Assembly: GCA_002269645.1 (NCBI GenBank)
Contig: NIVC01002082.1
Span: forward strand, 61,788-125,787
DNA from: Macrostomum lignano
Taxonomy: Eukaryota
DNA: 64,000 nucleotides
Direction: 5' to 3'
Positions 25,087 to 51,085 of the stretch are shown one piece after another. Position 1 is the first letter of the stretch. The number at the start of each line of letters is the position of its first letter. The position numbers were made by a program, and so were the translations under genes. The notes below the pieces were generated by a model. It saw nothing but the letters and a program-made list of their open reading frames with translations. It had not been told where the DNA came from and ran no database searches.

Positions 25087-28000
25087 CAGCCCGAGTCTCT
25101 TTCTGCCCCTCTCTCACTCTCCCCTCTTCTTCTCTCTCCCTCTCTCCCTCTCTCCATCTCCCTCTCTCCATCTCCCTCTCTCCCTCTCTCCCTCTTTCCC
25201 TCTCTCCCTCTCTCCCTCTCTCCTCTCTCCCTTTCGCCCTCTCTCACTCTCACCCTCTTCTCCTCTATCCCTCTCTCCCTCTCTCCCTCTCCCCTCTTCT
25301 CCTCTCTCCCTCTCTCCCTCTCCTCTCTCCCTCTCCCCTCTTCTCCTCTCTCCCTCTCCCCTCTTCTCCTCTCTCCCTCTCCCCCTCTTCTCCTCTCTCC
25401 CTCTCTCCCTCTTTTCCTCTCTCCCTCTCTCCCTCTCTCCCTCTCCCCCTCTTCTCCGCTCTCCCTCTCTCCCTCTCTCCCTCTTCTCCTCTCTCCCTCT
25501 CTCCCTCTCTCCCTCTCCTCTCTCCCTCTCCCCTCTTCTCCTCTCTCCCTCTCTCCCTCTCTCCCTCTCTCCCTCTCTCCCTCTTCTCCTCTCTCCCTCT
25601 CTCCCTCTCCCCCTCTTCTCCGCTCTCCCTCTCTCCCTCTCTCCCTCTTCTCCTCTCTCCCTCTCTCCCTCTCTCCTCTCCTCTCTCCCTCACCCCCTCT
25701 TCTCCTCTCTCCCTCTCTCCCTCTCTCCCTCTCTCCCTCTTCTCCTCTCTCCCTCTCTCCCTGTCTCCCTCTCCCTCTCCCCCTCTTCTCCTCTCTCCCT
25801 CTCTCCCTCTCTCCCTCTTCTCCTCTCTCCCTCTCCCCCTCTTCTCCGCTCTCCCTCTCTCCCTCTCTCCCTCTTCTCCTCTCTCCCTCTCTCCCTCTCC
25901 CCTCTTCTCCTCTCTCCCTCTCCCTCTTCTCCTCTCTCCTCTCCCCCTCTTCTCCTCTCTCCCTCTCTCCCTCTCTCCCTCTCTCCCTCTTCTCCTCTCT
26001 CCCTCTCTCCCTGTCTCCCTCTCCCTCTCCCCTCTTCTCCTCTCTCCCTCTCTCCCTCTCTCCCTCTTCTCCTCTCTCCTCTCCCCCTCTTCTCCGCTCT
26101 CCCTCTCTCCCTCTCTCCCTCTTCTCCTCTCTCCCTCTCTCCCTCTCCCCTCTTCTCATCTCTCCCTCTCCCCTCTTCTCCTCTCTCCCTCTCCCCCTCT
26201 TCTCCTCTCTCCCTCTCTCCCTCTTTCCCTCTCTCCCTCTCTCCCTCTTTCCCTCTCTCCCTTTCTCCCTCTCTCCCTCTCCCCCTCTTCTTCGCTCTCC
26301 TTCTCTCCCTCTCTCCCTCTTCTCCTCTCTCCCTCTCTCCCTCTCTCCCTCTCCTCTCTCCCTCTCCCCCTCTTCTCCTCTCTCCCTCTCTCCCTCTCTC
26401 CCTCTCTCCCTCTTCTCCTCTCTCCCTCTCTTCCTCTCTCCCTCTCTCCCTCTTCTCCTCTCTCCCTCTCCCCCTCTTCTCCGCTCTCCCTCTCTCCCTC
26501 TCTCCCTCTTCTCCTCTCTCCCTCTCTCCCTCTCCCCTCTTCTCCTCTCTCCCTCTCTCCCTCTCTCCCTCTTCTCCTCTCTCCCTCTCCCCCTCTTCTC
26601 CGCTCTCCCTCTCTCCCTCTCCCCTCTTCTCCTCTCTCCCTCTCCCCCTCTTCTCCTCTCTCCCTCTCTCCCTCTTTCTTTCTCTCCCTCTTTCCCTCTC
26701 TCCCTCTCTCTCTCTCTCCCTCTCCCCCTCTTCTTCGCTCTCCCTCTCTCCCTCTCTCCCTCTTCTCCTCTCTCCCTCTCTCCCTCTCTCCCTCTCCTCT
26801 CTCCCTCTCCCCCTCTTCTCCTCTCTCCCTCTCTCCCTCTCTCCCTCTCTCCCTCTTCTCCTCTCTCCCTCTCTCCCTCTCTCTCTCTCCTCTTCTCCTC
26901 TCTCCCTCTCCCCTCTTCTCCGCTCTCCCTCTCTCCCTCTCTCTCCTCTCTCCCTCTCTCCCTCTCCCCTCTTCTCCTCTCTCCCTCTCCCCTCTTCTCC
27001 TCTCTCCCTCTCCCCCTCTTCTCCTCTCTCCCTCTCTCCCTCTCTCCCTCTCTCCCTCTTCTCCTCTCTCCCTCTCTCCCTGTCTCCCTCTCCCTCTCCC
27101 CCTCTTCTCCTCTCTCCCTCTCTCCCTCTCCCCTCTTCTCCTCTCTCCCTCTCCCCTCTTCTCCTCTCTCCCTCTCCCCTCTTCTCCTCTCCCTTTCTCC
27201 CTCTCTCCCTCTCTCCCTCTCCTCTCTCCCTCTCCCCCTCTTCTCCTCTCTCCCTCTCTCCCTCTCTCCCTCTCTCCCTCTCTCCCTCTTCTCCTCTCTC
27301 CCTCTCCCCCTCTTCTCCTCTCTCCCTCTCTCCCTCTTTCCCTCTCTCCCTCTTTCCCTCTCTCCCTCTCTCTCTCTCTCCCTCTCCCCCTCTTCTTCGC
27401 TCTCCCTCTCTCCCTCTCTCCCTCTTCTCCTCTCTCCCTCTCTCCCTCTCTCCCTCTCCTCTCTCCCTCTCCCCCTCTTCTCCTCTCTCCCTCTCTCCCT
27501 CTCTCCCTCTCTCCCTCTTCTCCTCTCTCCCTCTCTCCCTCTCTCCCTCTCTCCCTCTTCTCCTCTCTCCCTCTCCCCCTCTTCTCCGCTCTCCCTCTCT
27601 CCCTCTCTCCCTCTTCTCCTCTCTCCCTCTCTCCTCTCCCTCTTCTCCTCTCTCCCTCTCCCCTCTTCTCCTCTCTCCCTCTCCCCCTCTTCTCCTCTCT
27701 CCCTCTCTCCCTCTCTCCCTCTCTCCCTCTTCTCCTCTCTCCCTCTCTCCCTGTCTCCCTCTCCCTCTCCCCCTCTTCTCCTCTCTCCCTCTCTCCCTCT
27801 CCCCTCTTCTCCTCTCTCCCTCTCCCCTCTTCTCCTCTCTCCCTCTCCCCCTCTTCTCCTCTCCCTTTCTCCCTCTCTCCCTCTCTCCCTCTCCTCTCTC
27901 CCTCTCCCCCTCTTCTCCTCTCTCCCTCTCTCCCTCTCTCCCTCTCTCCCTCTCTCCCTCTTCTCCTCTCCCATCTGTCCCTCTTCTCGGCCCTACCCTC

Positions 28001-29020
28001 TCCCATTGCCCCTCTCCCCCTCTTCTCCTCTCTCCCTCTCTCCCTCTCTCCCTCTCTCCCTCTCCCCTCTTCTCCTCTCTCCCTCTCCCCCTCTTCTCCT
28101 CTCTCCCTCTCTCCCTCTTTCCCTCTCTCCCTCTTTCCCTCTCTCCCTCTCTCTCTCTCTCCCTCTCCCCCTCTTCTTCGCTCTCCCTCTCTCCTCTCTC
28201 CCTCTTCTCCTCTCTCCCTCTCTCCCTCTCTCCCTCTCCTCTCTCCCTCTCCCCTCTTCTCCTCTCTCCCTCTCTCCCTCTCTCCCTCTCTCCCTCTTCT
28301 CCTCTCTCCCTCTCTCCCTCTCTCCCTCTCTCCCTCTTCTCCTCTCTCCCTCTCCCCCTCTTCTCCGCTCTCCCTCTCTCCCTCTCTCCCTCTTCTCCTC
28401 TCTCCCTCTCTCCCTCTCCCCTCTTCTCCTCTCTCCCTCTCCCCTCTTCTCCTCTCTCCCTCTCCCCCTCTTCTCCTCTCTCCCTCTCTCCCTCTCTCCC
28501 TCTCTCCCTCTTCTCCTCTCTCCCTCTCTCCCTGTCTCCCTCTCCCTCTCCCCCTCTTCTCCTCTCTCCCTCTCTCCCTCTCCCCTCTTCTCCTCTCTCC
28601 CTCTCCCCTCTTCTCCTCTCTCCCTCTCCCCCTCTTCTCCTCTCCCTTTCTCCCTCTCTCCCTCTCTCCCTCTCCTCTCTCCCTCTCCCCCTCTTCTCCT
28701 CTCTCCCTCTCTCCCTCTCTCCCTCTCTCCCTCTCTCCCTCTTCTCCTCTCCCATCTGTCCCTCTTCTCGGCCCTACCCTCTCCCATTGCCCCTCTCCCC
28801 TCTCTCCCTCTCTCCCTCTCCTCTCTCCCTCTCTCCCTCTTCTCCTCTCTCCCTCTCTCCCTCTCTCCCTCTTCTCCTCTCCCCTCTGTCCCTCTCTCCT
28901 CTCTCCCTTTCGCCCTCTCTCACTCTCACCCTCTTCTCCTCTCTCCCTCTCTCCCTCTCTCCCTCTCTCCCTCTTCTCCTCTCCCCTCTGTCCCTCTTTC
29001 CCTCTCCCCCTCTTCTCCTC
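25087..29020. repeat. ~3.9-kb polypyrimidine (CT-rich) tract; resumes at 33185-33330 after the LINE
   Basis: Nearly pure C/T strand. Marker tgtccctcttctcggccctaccctctcccattgccc occurs at ~27976, ~28756 and ~33222. Confidence 0.97.
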
Positions 29021-29541
29021 TGCACGCGAAGGCGTATTCAGCATGCCAGTGAAGTATGAGACAGACTAGGCCCATGGGCTAAGGTCTGCGATGCTTCACG
29101 CCTGCCCCTATCTTCAGCAGGTCAAGGCTGGTGGGAGGTCTGCACCCTCTATTTGCCTCTGGCAGCCGCAGACCCCCCCCCCCACGCTGTCTCGCAAGTC
29201 GACCCAGGGTACTCGTCCCCGCGTGTGTTCAAGGCAGTCCCTAGGGCTGCTGGACAGACTGGGCTCCGGCGCTGGCGACCCTATCCAGTGGCTTCGGCCG
29301 AATTTGGGTATGCGGGTCTGGCTCGCCAACCTGCAGGCCGTGGTACTGCTCAACGTACTCTCTAATGCCTAAGGTGTTGACCGTGCCGATGGGCTGGAAG
29401 GCCGGGGAGTAGTCCGGTCGCAAGCGGTCCCCCTCCTGGTGTCGGGCCAGCCTTGAGGGTGCTATTGGCCTACTGCCCGGTCAGGTGGAGCGGCCGGGTG
29501 GGTACCGCGCCCCTTTGAGGGTAGCCCACCAACCTTTTATC

Positions 29542-31060
29542 ATGGCCTTCGAGCCGTCTATGGATAATCAAGCTAACTCTAGGGACGGGGACCCTTCTAA
29601 ACCCCAACCTCAGTCCGAAGGACCGGCCGGCCCTGCTGGCAGATCCCAACCGACTGATTCAACTGTGGCAAAGGAAGGACCGGCTGGCTCTGCTGGCAGA
29701 TCCGACCAGAGCTACCAAACTCAAAATACCCAAAGACCTGCCAGCTCCGCTGGTGGATCTAAGGGAACCGCGAGCTCTGAGCCTAAAGGACCGGCCAAAT
29801 CTGGCAGATCCGATGAAGCTCAGCGGGCTCGGCTTGAGCGCAAACGCGCTAAACAACGCGCCAAAAGGCAGGCCAAGAAGGGAGCTGCGGGGGCCAAAGC
29901 GGCGGCGTCCACCATGGATGCTGAAGCGACTGGAGTCCCAAGGCAACCAGGCGGGCCGGCCGGTGGAAGCTCCAGTAGTTCAGCGGCGGCGCTCCCTGGA
30001 GCTGCTGCCGCGGCTGCTGAGGCCGAAACCACGGCGCAACAAATGGCCACTGCCAACAAGGAGGTTCCTTCGGGAGCTACCTTTGCGGCGAAGGCCAAGG
30101 CCAAAATCCCGGGAGTGATCATCCAAGGTCGCGACCAGGACTGGACCACTGATCAGCTTCAAAAAGTGTGGAGTGCTGTTGACTCCTATCTGATTGAGCT
30201 GACTGTCGAGGAGGGAATCTCCATCGGCATTGAGCGGATGGTGCTGCGAAGCACATTCGTTCTTATTGCTCCTAGCAGCGAGGAGGACGCTCGGCGGCTG
30301 CTCCAGCGGCTACCGACGGTCTCCTTGGATGCTGACCTTGGCGGAGCTCTTTTTCTTCGCGAGGGCCAGCGTCCAAAGACGATACCCTATGTGGTTTTCG
30401 TCCCTGCTAACAGCACCGCAGCTGGACCAGACGTTATTCGCCGGGTCCTACTGCGTCTGAACCCCGACCTCCCTGCTAGTGGACTGGTGTATCACCGCAA
30501 AGTCCGCAGGGGGGAGACGGGCAACTCAATTGTCCTCGGCCTTTCCAGCACCGGCGAGTCGGTACCCTAATGGATCCTCTTTCCAGCTGGGTGCCCTCAA
30601 GCTCAAGATGCGCCGAGGAAAGTCTGCCAAAGGGAAGGCTACTGCCAACCCCGGCATCTCCGGCAAGAGCGGGGCGCAGTCTAAGGCCCAAGGAAAGGCG
30701 CAAGCCGATCCCAAAGCCAAAGCTGCATCTCGCCCCTCTGCTAGCAGCAGTTCGGCGACCGCGGTAACGGCTCCGGCCAAGCCCCGGGAACCAAACCTGC
30801 CAGTCGGAGAAGGAGTTGAGGACGAGGCCGGGTCTTCGGAATCCGAGCTCTCCTCGGCCACCTTGGTGGGGTCTGAAGGTAAAGATGCAGGTGAGGAAGC
30901 TTCCTCCATCCTGTCATCGGAGCCTGAGGACTCTGCTGGGGGGCCGGTGGGGGTGAGGAGGCCATGGACGTCGACCAACTCCCATCTCCCAGTCAAGCCC
31001 CAGCGGCCTGGGACGAGGACGATCTGTTGTCCAAGTCTCCTTGATGGCCCTGGGCTCTAG
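29542..31060 (+). CDS. LINE ORF1 (Ala/Ser-rich; central domain resembling DUF4780-type LOA ORF1), split by a frameshift near 30560
   Basis: ATG 29542; LLRLNPDLPASGLVYHRKV...SIVLGL, continuing in the next frame with FQLGALKLK (ORF 30479-31060). Confidence 0.65.
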
Positions 31061-31083
31061 CCAGAAATTGCATTTAATACAGT

Positions 31084-33092
31084 ATGACTAAGCTCCACGC
31101 TGCCAAAGGAGCGACATTCTGTCTGCAAATTAATTTACAGCATTGCGTATCTGCGTCAGTAAATCTGATGAAGATTGCTGAGCTGTACAGGCCAGGCCTC
31201 ATCCTGATCCAGGAACCCTGGATGCGCAACGGTAAGTTGCCCAACATTCCCTCTGGCTACTCTGATTTTTATGTGTGTGGCCCGGGGAACAGCCGCCCTA
31301 GAGCGGCTATCCTCGCTGCTAGCCATCTCCAAGCTTGGCTGAGGACTGATCTCTCTGATGGAGACCTTTGTGTCATCCAATCTAATCATTTCTCTCCGCG
31401 TACGTGTCTTGTTGCCTCGGTTTATATCCCAGGCGACAGAGACCCTGCTCCTGAGAGTTTACTGCGCCTCGCGCAGTACTGCGAGTCCCAGAACGCTGAG
31501 CTGTGCTTAGGGGGCGACCTCAACGCGCACCACAAGCACTGGGGCAGCAAAGATACCAACACTAGAGGAGAGGAGCTTCTGGCCCTCATCTCTAACACAA
31601 ACCTCATGCTCTGCAACCGCGGCAGCACTCCTACCTTTAATAATGGCAGATGGACCGAGGTCCTCGACGCCACACTCGTTACCCCAAGACTCTTTGACAG
31701 AGTTGAGGAGTGGAGAGTCTGGTCTGAGGAGCCCTCCCTGTCTGACCACTGCTTTATCGCCTTTAACATCGCGGACACTAAAACCCAGTCTCCGATCACT
31801 TGGAGACGCAATATCCGCAACACTGATTGGGCGGCCTACAAGGCTGCCCTTGATCTGCACCTGCAGGAACTCACGGACTTACGTCCGATTGAGACCTGCG
31901 AGGATGTGGATCATATGGCTGAGACGCTGACAGGTTGCATTATTGAAGCCTACGAAGCGGCTTGTCCTGCTCGCGCCTACAAAGGCAAGACCTCGGCGCT
32001 GTGGTGGAACCCGGAGCTGGGGAAACTCAGGCGGAAGGCCAAAAGCCTTCATCGCCGTGCCATGAAGACCGGAAACCCGGAGGACATGGAGCTTTTCCGG
32101 CAAGCCTCCCGCAATTTCAAATCTGAAGTGCGCAAGGCCAAGGAATGTAAGTGGCGCCAATTCTGCAATGAATTGGATCAAGACAGACCTACTTCTAGGC
32201 TTGTCAAGGCCCTTACAATGGACAAAATGTCCAAATTAGCCATGATCAAAAAAGATGATGGCTCTCTTACTAAAGACCCTGAAGAAGTGCTTCAGCATAT
32301 GCTTAGCACATTCTTCCCGAGGGTACCTACTGCTAGACCGGAGCCCAACCATTCGATGGATGGAGCCACCCTAGCGGCGGGCATTGTCACTGAAGACCTA
32401 ATCGCTCGTGCGGTCAGAACCTTCAAACCCTTCAAATCTCCTGGACCTGATGGTATCTACCCTGTTCTCCTTCGTGAAGCAGCCAAGATACCCTCGTTCC
32501 TGAGACTCACCCGCAATCTCATGCGGGCCTCTATCCAGCTGGGATACGTTCCCAAATGCTGGACTGAAGCTCGGGTAGTCTTTATTCCCAAACCTGGGAA
32601 GGGTGACTACCAAAGCGTCAAGGCCTTCCGGCCTATTAGCTTAACGTCAGCAATGCTTAAGCTCACTGAGAGGCTTATTCTCTGGCGGCTGCTGTCCTGC
32701 GAGCTGACAGCGATGCCCCTCAGCAATAATCAGCACGCCTTCCGCACCGGGAGGTCGACTGACAGCGCCCTGCATGCGATTGTCGAGAAGATTGAAAGGG
32801 CGGTACTGGGTGACGGTTACGCTCTGGCTCTCTTTCTTGACATTGTTGGCGCCTTCGACAACGTTATCTTTGAAGCGTTTCAGAGGGCCCTTCAAAATCG
32901 CAAAGCTCATGCTACCTCACTTACCTCGGGCCACACACATCTATTACTGAAGCGTGCAAACCCGAAAACTTTAATCAGCTCATGCGCTACCTTCGGGCCA
33001 CCCGCAGGGCTGAACTCTCCTTTCCAGAGAGCACCATAGCTGCTGGCGACACTGGGGGACCTCCCTGGGCGGCGCCAACCCTCCGTCCATAG
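31084..33092 (+). pseudogene. LINE ORF2: APE endonuclease plus N-terminal RT, deletion at ~32905, C-terminal tail retained in another frame
   Basis: QINLQH, LIQEPW, GGDLNAHH..WGS, SDHC (APE); WWNPEL, KSPGPDGIYP, FRPISLTS, QHAFRTGRST, LFLDIVGAFDNV (RT). No YADD. From 32907: CYLTYLGP...NFNQLMRYLRAT...RP* (stop 33092). Confidence 0.88.
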
Positions 33093-33744
33093 CGACGCGT
33101 CGGCCGTTCAGGGACTAGCGGAATGGGCGCCCGCGCCTTCCCGCTGTGTCCCCTCCGGGACAGCCCTGCAGCTAAGTCAAAGTCTCCCTCTCTCCCTCTC
33201 TCCCTCTTCTCCTCTCCCCTCTGTCCCTCTTCTCGGCCCTACCCTCTCCCATTGCCCCTCTCCCCTCTCTCCCTCTTCCCCATTCTGTCCCTCATCGCTC
33301 AGCCGCTCTCTCCCACTCTCACCCATCTCCTATTTCTTTCTTCCAATTTCTGCACCTTCCTCTATTCTCCAACGCCTCTCTCCTTTCCCAGTTCAATCCG
33401 ATTAAAAAACTGTCAGTCTGGTTTTCCCCTTCGTTTAGTCGAGCGCCTCATCGATTGAAGGCCCAAAGGTCCGGATAGCGAGCCGGAAAGCAAACAGAGC
33501 TAATATAGGCAATCATCTTTTTAGCCTGACCGTGAGATTAAAATTGTATCTAGGCTTCGATTGTGCTTGAGTCCATAGCTAGTCCATAGACACACAAGAA
33601 TTGAAGACTGCGCGAGGAGAAAGAAGAGTAGGGGAAGGAAGAGTCGGAATAGAGGGGAGGAATTCAACAAAAAATTTATGCTCACGAAAATACCTTTCTT
33701 CTCTTCATAATGATTGTAGTTTATCAATAAGATTGTAAAGATTC

Positions 33745-34880
33745 TCTAATCAAATTGGTAAGTAGACTATACCGACATGTATCGATCTCATTATAAACTA
33801 GACTATACCGACATGTATCGATCTGATTATAAGATCGACTACACCGATATGCATCAATCCGATTATAAGCTAGACTACACCGATATGTATCGACCTGATT
33901 ATAAGCTAGACTACACCGATATGCATCGATCCGATTGTAAATACAGACAAAACCGACATGTATCGATCCAAATATATGATAGACTGCACCGATATGCATC
34001 GATCCGATTATAAACTAGACTACACTGATATGTATCGATCAGATTGTAAATACAGACTACACTGATATGTATCGATCAGATTGTAAATACAGACTACAAC
34101 GATATGTATCGATCCAAATATATGATAGACTGCACCGATATGTATCGATCCGATTAGAAACTAGACTACACTGATATGTATCGATCCAAATATATGATAG
34201 ACTGCACCGATATGTATCGATCCGATTATAAACTAGACTACACCGATATGTATCGATCAGATTGTAAATACAGACTACACCGATAGGTATCGATCCGATT
34301 ATAAATACAGACTACACCGATATGTATCAATCAGATTGTGAATACAGACTACACCGATATGTATCGATCCGATTGTAAATACAGACTACACCGATATGTA
34401 TCGATCAGATTGTAAATACAGACTACACCGATGTGTATCGATCAGATTGTAAATACAGACTACACCAATGTGTATCGATCAGATTGTAAATACAGACTAC
34501 ATCGATATGCATCGATCAGATTGTAAATACAGACTACACCGATATGTATCGATCCAATTATATAATAGACTGCACCGATATGTATCGATCCGATTATAAA
34601 CTAGACTACACCGATATGTATCGATCAGATTGTAAATACAAACTACACCGATATGTATCGATCAGATTGTAAATACAAACTACACCGATATGTATCGATC
34701 AGATTGTAAATACAGACTACACCGATATGCATCGATCCGATTGTAAATACAGACTACACCGACATGTATCGATCAGATTGTAAATACAGACTACACCGAT
34801 ATGTATCGATCAGATTGTAAATACAGACTACACCGATATGTATCGATCAGATTGTAAATACAGACTAAACCGATATGTAT
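33745..34880. repeat. 37-bp minisatellite (gactacaccgatatgtatcgatcagattgtaaataca)
   Basis: About 30 copies with variant units. Confidence 0.95.
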
Positions 34881-35384
34881 CGAACAGCTACTAACCAAAC
34901 TGCACAATTTCTTCTCTTGAGAAGGATGAAATATTTATGAAAATTCTATCAAAAAATGATGAGATTAAAACTGAGATGCCCTGCTGTCCAGCTCAAAGAC
35001 AGCCAGATTAAAGGTGTAAATTGATAAATTGCATTTCAAAATAATTTGCGCGCTAATCTCGTCGCAAAGTAACCCATTGGGCTTTTTCGATTTTCACCAA
35101 GCAGATTAACGTCAGACAAGAAGCTGATTTTGAGCCGGGCATGCAGGTAGAGAAAAGACGACTCAAATTCATTTGGGATGTCAAAGAAAATTTCTCTCGA
35201 GTTTCAACATAATCCCCTTTGCGTGACTGCATCTGCTCTGGGCCTGCAGCCTGTTTAGGAGATGGCTTACATGTACGAGTGTACTTTTCATTCACCTACG
35301 CGTAACTTTCATATCAGAGATTTTGATATACGTACGTTTCAGCCCCAGCCCCCATTTATAATGTTCAGCAGCACCCACCCCATT

Positions 35385-35417
35385 TATTTAAAATTATTGC
35401 AATATATAGTTATCAGT
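35385..35417 (+). promoter_or_regulatory. Candidate LTR core promoter: TATA-like TATTTAAAA plus Inr TCAGT
   Basis: TATTTAAAA at 35385 lies 30 nt upstream of the A of TCAGT (35415), which is canonical spacing. Confidence 0.4.
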
Positions 35418-35466
35418 CTCTCCAGAGAGAGTGCGCTTGCTGGTTGTTTTGTTCGGTTGGCTAGTA

Positions 35467-35510
35467 GCCGAAAAATAGTCGCTTACTGCGAAGACTCAAT
35501 TTATTGAATG
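35467..35510 (+). other. Spliced-leader (SL) exon-like sequence embedded in the 5' LTR
   Basis: 35476-35510 TAGTCGCTTACTGCGAAGACTCAATTTATTGAATG versus the recalled M. lignano SL CGGTCTCTTACTGCGAAGACTCAATTTATTGCATG: 31/35 identical, 25 contiguous, terminal ATG kept. Confidence 0.85.
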
Positions 35511-35525
35511 AACCATCAAAACATC

Positions 35526-35543
35526 TGGTAGCAGAGCGTGGTT
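35526..35543 (+). promoter_or_regulatory. Primer-binding site complementary to initiator tRNA-Met
   Basis: TGGTAGCAGAGCGTGGTT, 2 nt after the LTR end; fits the animal tRNAi-Met 3' end (...CTCTGCTACCA). Confidence 0.85.
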
Positions 35544-35585
35544 CTACTTGTGGTTCTACTTGTGGTTCTACTTCATTGGTAAAAA

Positions 35586-37594
35586 ATGTCTGATGAAGAA
35601 GCAGAGATGCAAGAACAAGTGCCGGAGGGAGACAGCCGTCTCATTTCGCTGAAGGCCAGAAAAGCGGTCGACAAGTGCGCGTTCACGAAGCAACGGAATC
35701 GTCTACTGAAGGTATTGGGCTCGGACGGAGCTACTTTAGCGGACGTGGAACCGCTGGCCGGCACTCTGGATGACCACTACGAGCGAGTTAGTGCGGTGCT
35801 ACAAGCGATTCTGCCCGAGGTCGTCGGGAATCTACCAGTGCAAGTCCAGACAGTAAAGGAGTTGGAAAAGCTGGAGACTGAGTACGGTGAGATTGTAAAT
35901 TTGCTGAGAGAATTGCGCAAGAGGGAACGAGAGGTACGACTAGAGTCGAGGGAGATCGAGCAGAAAGAGATGCGACAGAAGGAGTTGGAGGCAGTCAGGC
36001 GGCAGCGGATAGAGATGGAGGAGGAGGAGCGCAGAATGCAGCAGGAGTTTGCAGAGAGGCAGCGCGAGTTAGATGTCAGATTGGATGCGCTAAGACTGGC
36101 AGAGACGTCAGCGAGTGCAAATGATCAATTGTACTCCTCTCAACTACGGGTAGAAGCGGCCGTCCAATCGCAAGCTGCGTACTCAGTACCAGTCGCCAAC
36201 CCCATGGTTCAAGCCGACCCTTCAGTCAACCCCTTAATTGGGGGAGTGTCAGATCAACTAAGGAGCGCTGAGCAAGGGGGTGAGAGAGTAAAGGCCGGAG
36301 AAAAATCAATACCACCCACCCCAACTGGCGGCAAGTGTGACCACGCTGATTCTAACCAACCCGCGGACAGCTAGGTATCCAAGCTATGTACGGTGGAGCT
36401 AATTCGCCAATTGGGGCTTCACCGGCCGCCGCAGCAGAATGTACAGCGAAAGCTTGGGCTGAGGAAAGAATCGGTCAGGATATGTGGAGGCAGTTGCAGA
36501 GAGTTGCGATACCGGTGTTTAGTGGAGACAAACGGGAGTTTGAAGGATGGCGGGCGGCTTTCTATGCCTGCGTGCATGCCTCGCCATCTTCAGAAGCCTA
36601 TAAGTTGTTGCAATTGCGCCAGTCGCTGCGAGGAGAGGCATTAAAACTTGTTGCGAATCTTGGCTACTCGGAGTTCGCCTACAAAGCGGCTCTGGAAAGG
36701 CTTGAGCGGGAGTATGGTGGAGAGAGACGAAGACTGATGCTGGCACTGGAGGACTTGGATAGTTTCCAACCTATTCAGATAGAGAATGCAAGTCAATTAA
36801 AAAAGCTGGCCGACTTGCTGGATGTTACGGTAGTTAATCTACAGGCTGCAGGGCGAGAGAGTGAGCTAAGCAACAATGGACTTATGTACTTGAGAGTGCA
36901 AAAGAAGCTGCCAACCGAAACCCTAGCTCGTTTTCATCGGTGGATCGGAGAAGCTAGGAAAGAAGATTCGCTCAGAACGTTGCATCGATGGCTTCTGACG
37001 GAGGCAGAGTACATGACAGTAGCGTGTGAGGCGGTAAGAGGCGTGGCTTCTTCCGGTGAGACCGGACGGCACGACAGTGTAAAAGCCAAGAAAACTGTTT
37101 CTCGAGGGGCAGCCACAGCACGCTCGTTTTTTGTGAAGACGAATGATTCGAATAGCCAAAACAAAGAACAGGCGGAAGGGCGAAAAGGTTGTGGTCTCTG
37201 CGGAGAACAGCACGGAGTTTGGAGCTGCCCAAGGTTTCAACGAATGGAACCTGGAGCCAGATGGGCGATGGTTCGTGACAAGCGCCTGTGCTTCTGCTGC
37301 TTGGGAGCAAACCATCTAGCCGGTGCGTGCAAGCGAACGAGAGTGTGCGGTGTTGATGGCTGCAAAGCAAACCATAATCGGCTGCTGCATCAACGAGGGC
37401 CGGCGGCGACAACGGCGAATCCGCATGAAGGGGGGTCGCCCAAAACGATCGAAAGACCAAAGTCCTTCCAGGTGAAGAAGAGCACAGTTCAAGAGCCGCA
37501 AGAGGCATGCACTTTACTGGCCAGAACATCGCCGTCAATAGCGCTGAGGACTGTGCCCGTGATTTTATCCAACGGCGGTCGGAAGTCCGAGTGA
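35586..37594 (+). CDS. BEL/Pao gag (coiled coil, DUF1759-type core, three zinc knuckles), frameshifted near 36375
   Basis: IPVFSGDKREFEGWRAAF; YKLLQLRQSLRGEALKLV; CGLCGEQHGVWSC, CFCCLGANHLAGAC, CGVDGCKANHNRLLH. Confidence 0.9.
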
Positions 37595-39392
37595 ATGTCT
37601 TGCTGGACGACGCTAGCACCCGGTCGTACCTGAACTCTGACGTTGCAGCGGAACTCGGCTTGGAAGGCAACCTCGAACCGATGACGGTAAAGGTTCTGAA
37701 CGGCCAGGTGAGCACCTTTCAGACGGTTCCGGTTGAGGTCGACATCCGCAGTCTGGACGGCGCCTTTCGTGCCACAGTTACGGCCCACACAACTGAGAAA
37801 GTGACCGGTGGGATGGAAGCCGTAGATTGGAGCCAGCTTGCAAAGCGTTGGGCTCATCTGAGGGGCGTGCCGTTCGACAAAATTAAAGGGAAGCAGACTG
37901 TGGATATGCTCATTGGTGTGGACAATGCAGACTTGCACTTTGCCTGTCGCGAAGTAGGTGGGGAACCTGGAGAGCCGATTGCCAGACTGACGCCAATTGG
38001 GTGGACCTGCGTTGGACCAGTGAATCAAGTAGGAACTGCAGAAGAGCAGCAGCAGCAGACATTCTTTACGGTGACGGCGGAGAACGAGGCATCTGATCTT
38101 CTGCGGAAGATGTGGGAGATCGATGAAGTGCCAGATGGAGGACAGCAGGCCAGAATGTCCGCTGAAGATCAAAAGATCGTAGAAGCGACACGAGCATCCT
38201 TGAAGATGGAGAACGGCAGGTTTCAAGTGGCGATTCCTTGGAAAAAGAATCCGGAAGAACTACCTATGAACAACGAAGCTGCCCTACAGCGTCTCGTCAG
38301 CACAGAAAAGCGCTTGCTGAAGAACCCGGAGCTAGCGAAGGCGTACCAGGCTGTGATAGACAAGCATCTGGCAAAAGGCTATGTGCGGGAGGTCGGCATC
38401 AGCGAGCCAAGTCAGGCTGGCCAGTGGTTCTTGCCGCATTTCGCGATAGTGCGGGCCGATAAGGAGACGACCAAAGTTCGAATTGTGTTTGATGCAGCGG
38501 CTCGGAGCAATGGGGTCTGCCTAAATGACACCATTCATACGGGACCGAAGTTGCAGCAGGATTTGCTAAAGGTGCTCCTACGGTTCCGGAAGCATCCCGT
38601 GGCGCTAGCAGCCGACATCGAGGAGATGTATCTGAGAGTTCGAATTGCGCCGGAGGACAGAAGATTTTTCCGATTTCTGTGGCGAGACTTAGACTTGAAG
38701 CAAACGCCGAAGAGCTATGAGTTCTGCAGTGTGGTATTTGGCGTAAACTGCTCTCCGTTTCTGGCTCAGTTTGTGGCACAGGAGAATGCGCGACACTATC
38801 AGCAACAGCTGCCGCTGGCGGCCAACACCGTGCTGCATTCCACTTATATGGACGACAGTCTAGACTCCGTAGAAACCGTTGGCCAAGCGGTGAAACTCTT
38901 CCAACAACTCGTAGAATTATGGAGCAAGGCAGGGATGCGAGCTTGCAAATGGATGTCGAATTCGTTAGAAGTGCTGCAACACGTTCCAGTCGAGGACCGC
39001 GCAGAACGCGCCGAGTTGCTATTGAAAGGTGAGGCCCGAACCGCTAAGGCGCTTGGAGTGAATTGGAATGCGAAAGAGGACGTCCTAGGAATTTCCATCA
39101 GCGAGTCGAATGCTAGCGGCAAGATGATGACAAAGAGACTGCTTTTGCGCTGTGTGGCCGAGGTGTTTGACCCCTGTGGCTTCCTAGCTCCGGTAGTTAT
39201 CATAGGAAAGATAATGCTGCAGTTGGCATGGCAACAAGGTGTTGGGTGGGATGAAGCGTTGGATCCTGAGTTGGCTGATCAAGCGTTTCAGTGGACCAGT
39301 GAGCTCTCCAAAGCTACGAGACTAGCCGTGCCTCGGTGTCTGCGTCCAGACAACGGATCCATCGAACTTCACTCATTTGTAGACGCATCAGA
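37585..39392 (+). pseudogene. BEL/Pao pol: protease, RT and first RNase H motif only; integrase absent
   Basis: VNVLLDDAST; FLPHFAIVRADKETTKVRIVFDAA; LLRFRKHPVALAADIEEMYLRV; YMDD; LHSFVDAS, then unrelated T-rich DNA. Frameshift relative to gag near 37585. Confidence 0.92.
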
Positions 39393-39759
39393 TTTTTTTT
39401 TGGAGCGCAGTTGGCGCATTTGTTTTTCCTTTGAGTTTGAGCTGTTTGAAGTTACTGTTAAGTTACGGTGATGGGTTTTTTCTGTCAACCATTCTCGACT
39501 TTATTAAAATTGCGAGTTTAAGCTGAGTTGCAAATTTTTATATTTTTTGATGTTTAGTGGTAACTTATTTCAGTTTGCGGTCTTGCGCATTTTCATTATT
39601 TTCATTTGCGAGTCTTGGTGGCGGGTGCCGAAACATCTTTTCAGTTTGGCTTTTGAGCTCTTTTGATGTTTTTTTTTGCTATGGTCATAGTTTGTCCGTT
39701 CGGTTACTAGGTACTCAAGTTCAGTGTTTCCGGTCTTTGTTGCTGACATTGCTCTGTCA

Positions 39760-39771
39760 GGAAGGGGGGAA
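39760..39771 (+). promoter_or_regulatory. Polypurine tract
   Basis: GGAAGGGGGGAA immediately before the 3' LTR TG. Confidence 0.9.
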
Positions 39772-40043
39772 TGTTTAGGAGATGGCTTACATGTACGAGT
39801 GTACTTTTCATTCACCTACGCGTAACTTTCATATCAGAGATTTTGATATACGTACGTTTCAGCCCCAGCCCCCATTTATAATGTTCAGCAGCACCCACCC
39901 CATTTATTTAAAATTATTGCAATATATAGTTATCAGTCTCTCCAGAGAGAGTGCGCTTGCTGGTTGTTTTGTTCGGTTGGCTAGTAGCCGAAAAATAGTC
40001 GCTTACTGCGAAGACTCAATTTATTGAATGAACCATCAAAACA
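39772..40043 (+). repeat. 3' LTR of the BEL/Pao element (SL-like sequence at 39987-40030)
   Basis: No differences from the 5' LTR seen by eye. Confidence 0.97.
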
Positions 40044-40159
40044 CAGCCCACCTGCTGCAATAGTAAATTGAATGGGATTCAATTGCTGACTGATCTGAGC
40101 AAAACTGAAGCTCTGATAATTCGATTTTCGTTTCATATTTCTTTCCTTATTGTGCGACT

Positions 40160-44479: not shown

Positions 44480-51085
<6,606 letters not shown>

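What the first reader, a model, noticed from the sequence alone, without database searches (positions are those of the whole stretch)
35467..35510. A trans-splicing spliced-leader exon is hard-wired into a BEL/Pao retrotransposon LTR
Seen: the last ~57 nt of the LTR read GCCGAAAAATAGTCGCTTACTGCGAAGACTCAATTTATTGAATG-AACCATCAAAACA. Recalled knowledge: the M. lignano SL is CGGTCTCTTACTGCGAAGACTCAATTTATTGCATG, with a longer form starting GCCGTAAAGA; I am less sure of that 5' part. The match is 31/35 with 25 contiguous identities, and the flatworm-typical terminal AUG is kept. There is no GT donor, SL intron or Sm site after the ATG, so this is not an SL RNA gene. Inference: the element captured the leader, e.g. 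by reverse-transcribing a trans-spliced RNA, and now encodes it in cis. That could let its RNA mimic a trans-spliced mRNA (translation, export, evasion of surveillance) or act as a decoy for SL-binding factors. I do not know of a description of this in flatworms.
Basis: partly seen in the sequence, partly recalled or inferred. Interest (0 to 1): 0.93.

Follow-up and report, generated by a model that had tools for sequence, protein, structure and literature searches.

The report
Spliced-leader relic inside a retrotransposon LTR
A young BEL/Pao retrotransposon of the flatworm Macrostomum carries a slightly decayed copy of the worm's complete trans-splicing leader in both of its terminal repeats, most likely a fossil left when a trans-spliced copy of the element's RNA was reverse-transcribed. 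This kind of relic has already been noted in other flatworms and in dinoflagellates.

Summary
The 44-nt block at 35467-35510, and its identical twin at 39987-40030, aligns with the complete 45-nt Macrostomum spliced leader (SL): 39/45 identities, 25 of them contiguous. The match starts at the leader's first known base and stops at its terminal ATG. A real SL RNA gene shows no significant similarity to the LTR upstream or downstream of the exon.

The block lies in both 272-bp, 100 % identical LTRs of a 4.8-kb BEL/Pao element that has a target-site duplication and a truncated pol. The host is almost certainly M. lignano. The block ends 13 nt before the LTR end and 15 nt before an initiator-tRNA-type primer-binding site.

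Best explanation: it is a fossil of reverse transcription of a trans-spliced element RNA, in which strong-stop DNA copied the leader. It has been inherited by the family since, because the block is 13 % diverged from the SL while the LTRs are identical.

The "mimic of trans-spliced mRNA" reading is untested and faces counter-evidence:
- Consensus TATA and Inr motifs place the transcription start about 52 nt upstream of the block.
- The 5' third of the block is degenerate.
- The ATG opens a 7-codon upstream ORF.

It is not new in kind. A 2025 survey of parasitic flatworms reported 597 SL-bearing loci in LTR/LINE elements and gave the same interpretation. I rate it a new member of a known kind, of moderate-to-low interest.

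The parts
35247..35251 (.). left target-site duplication, CAGCC
   Evidence: Read directly. The same 5 nt follow the 3' LTR.
35252..35523 (+). 5' LTR, 272 bp, TG...CA
   Evidence: 272/272 identical to 39772-40043. No other copy in the window.
35385..35393 (+). TATA-like box TATTTAAAA (inferred)
   Evidence: Sequence reading. It lies 30 nt upstream of the A of the Inr-like TCAGTCT. A consensus match only, not measured.
35413..35419 (+). Inr-like TCAGTCT; predicted transcription start at A 35415 (inferred)
   Evidence: Sequence reading. This would put the SL block at +53 to +96 of the RNA.
35467..35510 (+). spliced-leader relic in the 5' LTR (full-length SL exon, 39/45)
   Evidence: Published SL sequences.
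35508..35531 (+). 7-codon upstream ORF (MNHQNIW*) opened by the leader's terminal ATG
   Evidence: Translation. It ends inside the primer-binding site, 55 nt before the ORF1 ATG.
35511..35523 (+). last 13 nt of the LTR (AACCATCAAAACA), taken to be the U5 remnant downstream of the former trans-splice acceptor
   Evidence: No similarity to the SL RNA intron.
35526..35543 (+). primer-binding site; TGGTAGCAGAG is complementary to the 3' end of initiator tRNA-Met
   Evidence: Sequence. The tRNA assignment comes from my own knowledge of the eukaryotic tRNAi-Met 3' end (...CTCTGCTACCA). No tRNA gene in the window to check against.
35586..36374 (+). ORF1, 262 aa, charged and coiled-coil-like, no known family
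   Evidence: No homologue found.
36386..37594 (+). ORF2, gag (DUF1759 plus two zinc knuckles)
   Evidence: Pfam PF03564, E = 3.3e-13. Translation.
37507..39471 (+). ORF3, pol: aspartic protease, RT and the first half of the Pao Peptidase_A17 domain. Truncated; no RNase H or integrase.
   Evidence: A17 matched at profile positions 1-89 of 162. The relative P0012 has the full A17 domain followed by an integrase domain.
39760..39771 (+). polypurine tract GGAAGGGGGGAA
   Evidence: Read; it abuts the 3' LTR.
39772..40043 (+). 3' LTR
39987..40030 (+). spliced-leader relic in the 3' LTR, identical to the 5' copy
40044..40048 (.). right target-site duplication, CAGCC

Best explanation
The block is a retro-copied spliced leader. 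At some point in the history of this BEL/Pao family, an element RNA was SL trans-spliced at an acceptor that lay 13 nt upstream of the end of U5.

Reverse transcription primed at the tRNA primer-binding site then copied those 13 nt and the whole 45-nt leader to the RNA's 5' end. The strong-stop DNA next switched template by a non-homologous or microhomology jump, either to the RNA's 3' end or to a co-packaged unspliced RNA. Normal completion of the cDNA placed the leader in both LTRs.

The outron and its AG acceptor were lost in the process, so the event cannot repeat at that site. From then on the leader has been ordinary cis-encoded LTR sequence, probably in U5, copied at every cycle and slowly decaying. 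The copy in this window is a recent insertion of a pol-truncated, trans-mobilised member of the family.

Most likely the block has no leader-specific function today. It is part of the 5' untranslated leader between R and the primer-binding site.

What is shown:
- the exon-precise match;
- its position in the LTR;
- the element's anatomy;
- the contrast between block divergence and LTR identity.

What is inferred:
- the trans-splicing event;
- the template switch;
- the U3/R/U5 borders;
- the lack of function.
For: 1. **Exon-precise match.** The local alignment to the 45-nt leader begins at its base 1 and ends at its terminal ATG.
   - The exon's 3' end is fixed independently by five trans-spliced mRNA contigs (L001-L004, L006).
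   - It is also fixed by a real SL RNA gene, L005:615-725, which has a GTAAGA donor and three hairpins and folds with z = -3.57.
2. **No gene flanks.** The LTR shows no similarity to the flanks of the SL RNA gene. Upstream, 729 of 2000 shuffles reached the observed score; downstream, 485 of 2000 did. The source was therefore mature, spliced leader rather than gene DNA.
3. **Position.** The block ends 13 nt before the LTR end and 15 nt before the primer-binding site. This is the only place where a 5'-terminal leader can enter an LTR through strong-stop DNA.
4. **Real, recently mobile element.** The LTRs are 272/272 identical. The element has a 5-bp target-site duplication and a polypurine tract, and gag and pol domains.
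5. **Older than this insertion.** The block differs from the leader at 6 of 45 positions while the LTRs have no differences. The leader is identical in M. lignano, M. cliftonense and M. hystrix. The window is M. lignano or a very close relative: 95/95 aa identity of the neighbouring LINE to an M. lignano protein.
6. **No re-acquisition.** If the leader were re-acquired by trans-splicing at each cycle, it would be canonical. It is not, and no YTNCAG acceptor (motif from PMC8629364) borders the block.
7. **Precedents.**
   - Cer1 RNA of C. elegans is SL1 trans-spliced (PMC3315495).
   - 597 leader-bearing loci lie in LTR/LINE elements of parasitic flatworms (PMC12582326).
   - Dinoflagellates carry relic leaders (PMC3229502).
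Against: - **One element only.** Only one element could be examined. No relative closer than about 50-61 % pol identity exists in the searchable collections, so neither spread nor conservation of the block within the family could be measured.
- **No acceptor to see.** The ancestral acceptor is gone by construction and cannot be seen.
- **Extra step needed.** The model needs a non-homologous template switch.
- **Uneven differences.** Five differences fall in the first 16 bases and one in the last 29 (Fisher p = 0.017). This could mean selective constraint on the 3' two-thirds, which would argue against 'no function'. It could equally reflect a variant donor leader or chance.
- **Signals not measured.** The transcription start and poly(A) site are read from consensus motifs only.
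Confidence: 0.65

Rival explanations
1. Functional mimicry. The LTR-encoded leader is kept by selection because it makes the element's RNA resemble a trans-spliced host mRNA. That could aid translation or export. It could also titrate leader-binding factors. A further possibility is that it makes small-RNA silencing of the element costly, since 25 nt are identical to a sequence carried by about 30 % of host mRNAs.
For: - The 3' 29 nt of the block carry one change against five in the first 16 nt (p = 0.017).
- The terminal ATG is kept.
- The family is recently active: identical LTRs and a target-site duplication.
- About 30 % of M. lignano genes are trans-spliced to this leader (PMC8629364).
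Against: - The consensus TATA (35385) and Inr (35415) predict a start about 52 nt upstream of the block, so the block would not be 5'-terminal. A Pol II LTR transcript would carry an m7G cap, not a TMG cap. Both points are inference.
- The 5' third of the block, next to where the cap would be, is the degenerate part.
- The ATG creates a 7-codon upstream ORF that stops before gag, which is more likely to hinder than to help gag translation.
- With a single copy there is no evidence of constraint.
Confidence: 0.12
2. The leader serves as the R repeat for trans-spliced genomic RNAs. Element RNAs would be trans-spliced at each cycle, and the cis-encoded leader in the 3' LTR would provide the homology for first-strand transfer. 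That would free the element from needing its own promoter-defined R.
For: - The leader is present in both LTRs.
- It lies close to the primer-binding site.
- LTR-element RNAs can be trans-spliced (Cer1).
Against: - Strong-stop DNA copied from a freshly trans-spliced RNA would reset the block to the canonical leader at each cycle, yet the block differs at 6 of 45 positions.
- No AG, and no YTNCAG acceptor, precedes the 13-nt U5 remnant; the block ends in TG.
- A plausible poly(A) signal and GT-rich element lie upstream of the block, which would leave the block out of the RNA's 3' end (a reading of the sequence).
Confidence: 0.04
3. Capture at the DNA level. A piece of an SL RNA gene or pseudogene was inserted into the LTR, or converted into it, perhaps bringing promoter activity with it.
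For: In some organisms the SL exon of SL RNA genes carries internal promoter elements (my own knowledge, from nematodes). The block contains the whole exon.
Against: - The similarity stops exactly at both exon ends.
- The donor GTAAG, the intron, the Sm site and the upstream region are all absent, and the flanks score at chance.
- The SL RNA gene query finds nothing beyond the exon anywhere in the window.
- A DNA-level event has no reason to respect the exon borders.
Confidence: 0.04
4. Two template switches onto a foreign leader-bearing RNA. During strong-stop synthesis, reverse transcriptase jumped from the element's U5 onto a co-packaged host trans-spliced mRNA or a free leader, and then back. 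In this case the element's own RNA was never trans-spliced.
For: It predicts the same exon-precise block upstream of the primer-binding site. Trans-spliced mRNAs are abundant.
Against: - It needs two non-homologous switches instead of one.
- The first switch would have to land exactly at the last base of the leader.
- The present data cannot separate it from the main model.
Confidence: 0.1

Closest known systems
Leader-bearing loci inside LTR and LINE elements of parasitic flatworms (PMC12582326, Mol Biol Evol 2025)
   Same: Genomic copies of the leader with no other SL RNA feature, embedded in retrotransposons of Platyhelminthes. [quoted passage not shown]
   Different: - Those 597 loci were discarded as contaminants of an SL RNA gene search. 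They are described only as 'partial leader sequences', with no anatomy given.
- Here the leader is full-length. It sits in both LTRs of an intact-ended, recently inserted BEL/Pao element, 15 nt from the primer-binding site.
- The host here is a free-living macrostomid.
Relic spliced leaders of dinoflagellate retrogenes (Slamovits and Keeling 2008, as described in PMC3229502)
   Same: A DNA-encoded leader left by reverse transcription of trans-spliced RNA, which decays with age.
   Different: - Dinoflagellate relics lie at the 5' ends of host retrogenes.
- They are truncated at an AG inside the leader by the next round of trans-splicing, and they occur in tandem.
- Here there is one untruncated copy inside a retrotransposon LTR, and no sign of renewed trans-splicing.
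SL1 trans-splicing of Cer1 RNA in C. elegans (PMC3315495)
   Same: Shows that RNA of an LTR retrotransposon can receive a spliced leader.
   Different: In Cer1 only the spliced 2.4-kb mRNA is trans-spliced, not the 8-kb gag-pol RNA, and no leader is encoded in the Cer1 LTR.
Genuine Macrostomum SL RNA gene (109 bp, PMC8629364; example L005:615-725)
   Same: Shares the 45-nt exon at 39/45 identity.
   Different: The LTR block lacks the GTAAG donor, the intron hairpins, the Sm-like site and any flank similarity.
Retrotransposons that target SL RNA genes (SLACS, CZAR and CRE in trypanosomatids; NeSL-1 in C. elegans; my own knowledge)
   Same: An association between retroelements and leader sequence.
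   Different: Those are non-LTR elements that insert into SL RNA genes. They do not carry the leader within their own repeats.

Membership tests
BEL/Pao LTR retrotransposon | Direct long terminal repeats ending in TG...CA, flanked by a short target-site duplication | tested here: met
   272-bp LTRs, 100 % identical. They start TGTT and end AACA. 5-bp duplication CAGCC.
BEL/Pao LTR retrotransposon | Primer-binding site after the 5' LTR and polypurine tract before the 3' LTR | tested here: met
   TGGTAGCAGAG lies 2 nt after the LTR. GGAAGGGGGGAA abuts the 3' LTR. The tRNAi-Met assignment is from my own knowledge.
BEL/Pao LTR retrotransposon | gag with DUF1759, and pol with the Pao-type Peptidase_A17 domain after RT | tested here: met
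   PF03564 at 3.3e-13, PF00078 at 1.4e-09, PF05380 at 3.9e-20. The best database relatives are BEL/Pao pols.
BEL/Pao LTR retrotransposon | Complete pol (PR-RT-RNase H-integrase), i.e. autonomy | tested here: not met
   pol stops at profile position 89 of 162 of Peptidase_A17, and no integrase domain follows. The relative P0012 has both. This copy is a deleted, non-autonomous member of the family.
SL RNA gene | Leader exon | tested here: met
   39/45 identity to the 45-nt leader.
SL RNA gene | GT splice donor immediately after the exon | tested here: not met
   ATG is followed by AACCAT. The real gene has ATG then GTAAGA.
SL RNA gene | Intron with hairpins and an Sm-like site | tested here: not met
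   Downstream similarity is at chance level. The SL RNA gene query finds only the exon in the window. The fold of the LTR leader is not unusual (z = -1.74) compared with z = -3.57 for the real gene.
Retro-copied (relic) spliced leader | Leader encoded in genomic DNA, with borders at the ends of the mature exon | tested here: met
   The alignment starts at leader base 1 and ends at the ATG. The exon end is fixed by five mRNA contigs and one SL RNA gene.
Retro-copied (relic) spliced leader | Lies in sequence that has passed through reverse transcription | tested here: met
   It lies inside both LTRs of a retrotransposon, just upstream of the primer-binding site.
Retro-copied (relic) spliced leader | The parent transcript was trans-spliced at that junction | not testable with these tools
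   This needs sister elements that retain the acceptor, or RNA data. No family member is available in the searchable collections.

The most novel reading that the evidence does not exclude
The leader copy is kept by selection. Its 3' 29 nt are nearly perfect, including a 25-nt run identical to the sequence on about 30 % of host mRNAs. On this reading the element's RNA uses the block in one of two ways:
- to engage leader-dependent steps of translation or export;
- to make small-RNA silencing of the element self-harmful to the host.

The second case would be a transposon hiding behind an essential host sequence.
Probability: 0.1. Interest if true: 0.8.

Novelty: new member of a known kind. Interest (0 to 1): 0.35.

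Why it matters
- **Evidence of an event.** The block is an anatomically clean record that the RNA of an LTR retrotransposon was trans-spliced and still completed reverse transcription and integration. It shows where in the LTR such a leader ends up: U5, next to the primer-binding site.
- **A dated natural experiment.** It provides a leader sequence expressed in cis without the SL RNA context. That could be used to ask what the leader sequence does apart from its cap.
- **A practical trap.** Leader-trimming pipelines used to call trans-splice sites and gene boundaries in Macrostomum would probably treat reads from this LTR as trans-spliced at 35511. Leader-seeded searches for SL RNA genes below 100 % identity will pick up such copies.

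Tried and rejected
- **Chance match:** rejected. No match in 100 shuffles, and an expectation of about 1e-10.
- **SL RNA gene or pseudogene:** rejected. No donor, intron or Sm site, and flank similarity at chance level.
- **Upstream similarity seen by eye:** the LTR stretch CTGGTTGTTTTG... resembles the upstream region of the SL RNA gene. Tested, and not significant: 729 of 2000 shuffles scored as well.
- **Splice acceptor before the block:** I considered whether the T/G-rich tract plus TAGTAG just upstream of the block is a trans-splice acceptor. It does not fit the M. lignano acceptor motif YTNCAG, so I dropped it.
- **Search for family members** (every search below found no family member):
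  - ORF1 gave no homologue.
  - pol gave nothing closer than about 50 % identity, with one hit at 61 % (P0026 on contig L007, which has no LTR).
  - Exact-protein look-ups of ORF1 and ORF3 found nothing.
  - The 25-mer found no viral contig.
  - In metagenomes the 25-mer found only canonical leaders: five mRNAs and one SL RNA gene.
  - The window holds no other copy of the LTR or the internal region.
- **Rfam:** no match in the window or in L005.
- **tRNA genes:** none in the window to confirm the primer.
- **Consensus sequences:** the supplements of the M. lignano LTR-retrotransposon survey are not held as text.
- **RNA structure:** the fold of the LTR leader is not unusual (z = -1.74).

Full report
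**1. The observation**

Window 35467-35510 reads GCCGAAAAATAGTCGCTTACTGCGAAGACTCAATTTATTGAATG. It is followed by AACCATCAAAACA and then TC TGGTAGCAGAG.... The 25-mer CTTACTGCGAAGACTCAATTTATTG occurs twice in the window, at 35482 and 40002 on the + strand, and never in 100 shuffles. The chance expectation is about 1e-10.

The published leader of M. lignano is CCGTAAAGACGGTCTCTTACTGCGAAGACTCAATTTATTGCATG (PMC5173321). The 35-nt form appears in PMC8629364. [quoted passage not shown]

Against the 45-nt leader the block scores 39/45 with one 1-nt gap. The best local alignment begins at leader base 1 and ends at the terminal ATG.

**2. The element**

A self-comparison shows that 35252-35523 and 39772-40043 are 272/272 identical. 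The repeats start TG and end CA.
- They are flanked by a 5-bp duplication, CAGCC, at 35247-51 and 40044-48.
- The 5' repeat is followed after 2 nt by TGGTAGCAGAG. This is complementary to the 3' end of initiator tRNA-Met (my own knowledge).
- The 3' repeat is preceded by the polypurine tract GGAAGGGGGGAA.

Three ORFs lie between the repeats.
- ORF1 has 262 aa, matches no family and has no homologue.
- ORF2 is a DUF1759 gag with two zinc knuckles.
- ORF3 is a pol with aspartic protease, RT and only the first 89 of 162 profile positions of the Pao Peptidase_A17 domain. The relative P0012 has the whole domain followed by an integrase domain.

The element is therefore a BEL/Pao retrotransposon of 4,792 bp that has lost RNase H and integrase. 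Its identical LTRs and intact duplication show that it inserted very recently, presumably mobilised in trans. No other copy or solo LTR lies in the window.

**3. The host**

The LINE-like ORF at 31084-33039 has APE and RT domains. It shares a 95/95-aa stretch with a UniRef protein of Macrostomum lignano. The window is therefore M. lignano or a very close relative. Its true leader is the published one, which is identical in the three sequenced Macrostomum species.

**4. Comparison with real leader sequences**

A scan of public metagenome contigs with the 25-mer returned six contigs.
- Five carry the match at their 5' end (L001-L004, L006). They are trans-spliced mRNAs that read ...TTGCATG followed by five different exons. 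This fixes the 3' end of the leader exon.
- The sixth, L005, carries a genuine SL RNA gene. It has the 45-nt exon at 615-659, a GTAAGA donor, two further hairpins and a U-rich Sm-like site. It folds far better than shuffled sequence (z = -3.57).

The 120 nt upstream and the 120 nt downstream of the LTR block were aligned to the same flanks of this gene. The scores were at chance level: 729 and 485 of 2000 shuffles did as well. A search with the whole gene finds only the exon in the window.

The LTR therefore holds the mature leader, from first to last base, and nothing else of the gene. This points to an RNA-level source, namely a spliced product. It speaks against insertion of gene DNA.

**5. 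How it got there (inference)**

In an LTR retrotransposon, only sequence between the RNA's 5' end and the primer-binding site is copied into minus-strand strong-stop DNA, and from there into both LTRs. Suppose a leader was trans-spliced to an acceptor 13 nt upstream of the end of U5. It would be copied in full, and the outron with its AG would be lost.

After a template switch without R homology, the cDNA would be completed. The switch could go to the RNA's 3' end or to a co-packaged unspliced RNA. The GCC shared between the leader's start and the palindrome GGCTAGTAGCC at 35459-35469 could have served as microhomology. Both LTRs would then read U3-R-(part of U5)-leader-13 nt. That is the arrangement seen.

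Trans-splicing of LTR-element RNA has a precedent in Cer1 of C. elegans (PMC3315495).

**6. Age, and what the block is not**

The block differs from the leader at positions 5 (deleted), 9, 11, 12, 16 and 42, while the two LTRs have no difference in 272 bp. There are two ways to account for this:
- the leader was captured long before this insertion and has been inherited through the family's master copies;
- the donor was an undescribed variant leader.

The divergence also argues against a model in which the leader is renewed by trans-splicing at each cycle and serves as R. Strong-stop DNA would then restore the canonical sequence each time. In addition, the block is not bordered by the M. lignano acceptor motif YTNCAG (PMC8629364).

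**7. Present role**

This section reads the LTR against general consensus motifs. It is inference, not measurement.
- TATTTAAAA (35385-93) lies 30 nt upstream of the A of TCAGTCT (35413-19). This is a textbook TATA-Inr pair, and it would start the RNA at about 35415, placing the block at +53 to +96.
- AATATA (35401-06) followed by a GT-rich stretch (35440-59) looks like a poly(A) signal with its downstream element. That would end R near 35430 and place the block in U5.

If this reading is right, the block is internal to the 5' leader of an m7G-capped Pol II transcript. It would not be a 5'-terminal, TMG-capped leader.

The leader's ATG (35508) opens a 7-codon upstream ORF, MNHQNIW*, which ends inside the primer-binding site, 55 nt before the ORF1 ATG. 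The leader region does not fold unusually (z = -1.74).

These points weigh against mimicry of trans-spliced mRNA. One observation keeps a functional reading alive: the differences are unevenly spread, with 5 in the first 16 bases and 1 in the last 29 (Fisher p = 0.017). From a single sequence this is weak.

**8. What is known**

Ustyantsev and Berezikov (PMC8629364) searched the M. lignano genome with the leader at 100 % identity only. They would have missed this block. They also noted that the 'SL RNA' of the first genome paper was in fact a leader encoded at the 5' end of a protein-coding gene.

The 2025 survey of M. lignano LTR retrotransposons lists five Bel/Pao families and does not mention the leader (PMC12801592).

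The 2025 study of SL RNA genes in parasitic flatworms (PMC12582326) discarded 597 leader-bearing loci that lay in LTR and LINE elements. [quoted passage not shown] Dinoflagellate relic leaders are the classic case of the same process acting on host genes (PMC3229502).

The kind of feature and its proposed origin are therefore already in the literature. What this locus adds is a clean anatomy. The leader is full-length, has exon-precise borders and lies in U5 next to the primer-binding site of a recently mobile BEL/Pao element. The host is a free-living flatworm that serves as a transgenic model.

**9. Limits**

No family member could be retrieved. They are listed as next steps.

**10. Verdict**

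- The functional claims are unsupported and somewhat disfavoured.
- This is a new member of a known kind.
- Interest is 0.35.

Noticed in passing
window 29485-33458: A non-LTR (LINE-like) retrotransposon lies just upstream. Its ORF at 31084-33039 has endonuclease and RT domains and shares a 95/95-aa stretch with an M. lignano UniRef protein, which identifies the host species. It carries no leader-like sequence.
   Followed up: partly
window 35537-35572: Directly after the primer-binding site, the 12-mer GTGGTTCTACTT is repeated three times in tandem, in the untranslated leader before ORF1. Its function is unknown. It might give extra contacts with the primer tRNA, as the boxes next to the Ty1 primer-binding site do (my own knowledge); I did not test this.
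   Followed up: no
window 35459-35469: The perfect palindrome GGCTAGTAGCC spans the 5' junction of the leader block. Its last three bases are the first three of the leader. It is a possible microhomology for the template switch, or a small hairpin.
   Followed up: no
window 33764-34887, 25107-29018, 44481-48756, 48741-50581 and many others: The window is dominated by tandem arrays. Among them are a 37-bp satellite that ends 365 bp before the element, a 3.9-kb (CCCTCTCT)n array, a 4.3-kb (TATC)n array and a 273-bp repeat. TRF listed 35 rows in all. No obvious host gene was found.
   Followed up: no
L005 (Ga0302322_100095745) 601-725 and 1783-2922: This environmental metagenome contig holds a complete Macrostomum-type SL RNA gene. 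A partial duplicate of the leader's start (GCCGTAAAC) lies 14 nt upstream of it. About 1.1 kb downstream is a gene for a Na/K-ATPase beta chain (Pfam E = 9.6e-50). Rfam has no family that matches this SL RNA.
   Followed up: partly
L001-L004, L006 (Ga0316592): Five contigs of one JGI sample start with the Macrostomum leader followed by different coding exons. The sample therefore contains transcripts of a Macrostomum-like flatworm.
   Followed up: no
window 36356-36386 and 37429-37594: The three ORFs of the element lie in three different frames, each shifted by -1 from the one before, and the open frames overlap at both ORF junctions. This suggests two programmed frameshifts or one disabling mutation. 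With identical LTRs, this is probably the structure of the copy that was mobilised.
   Followed up: no
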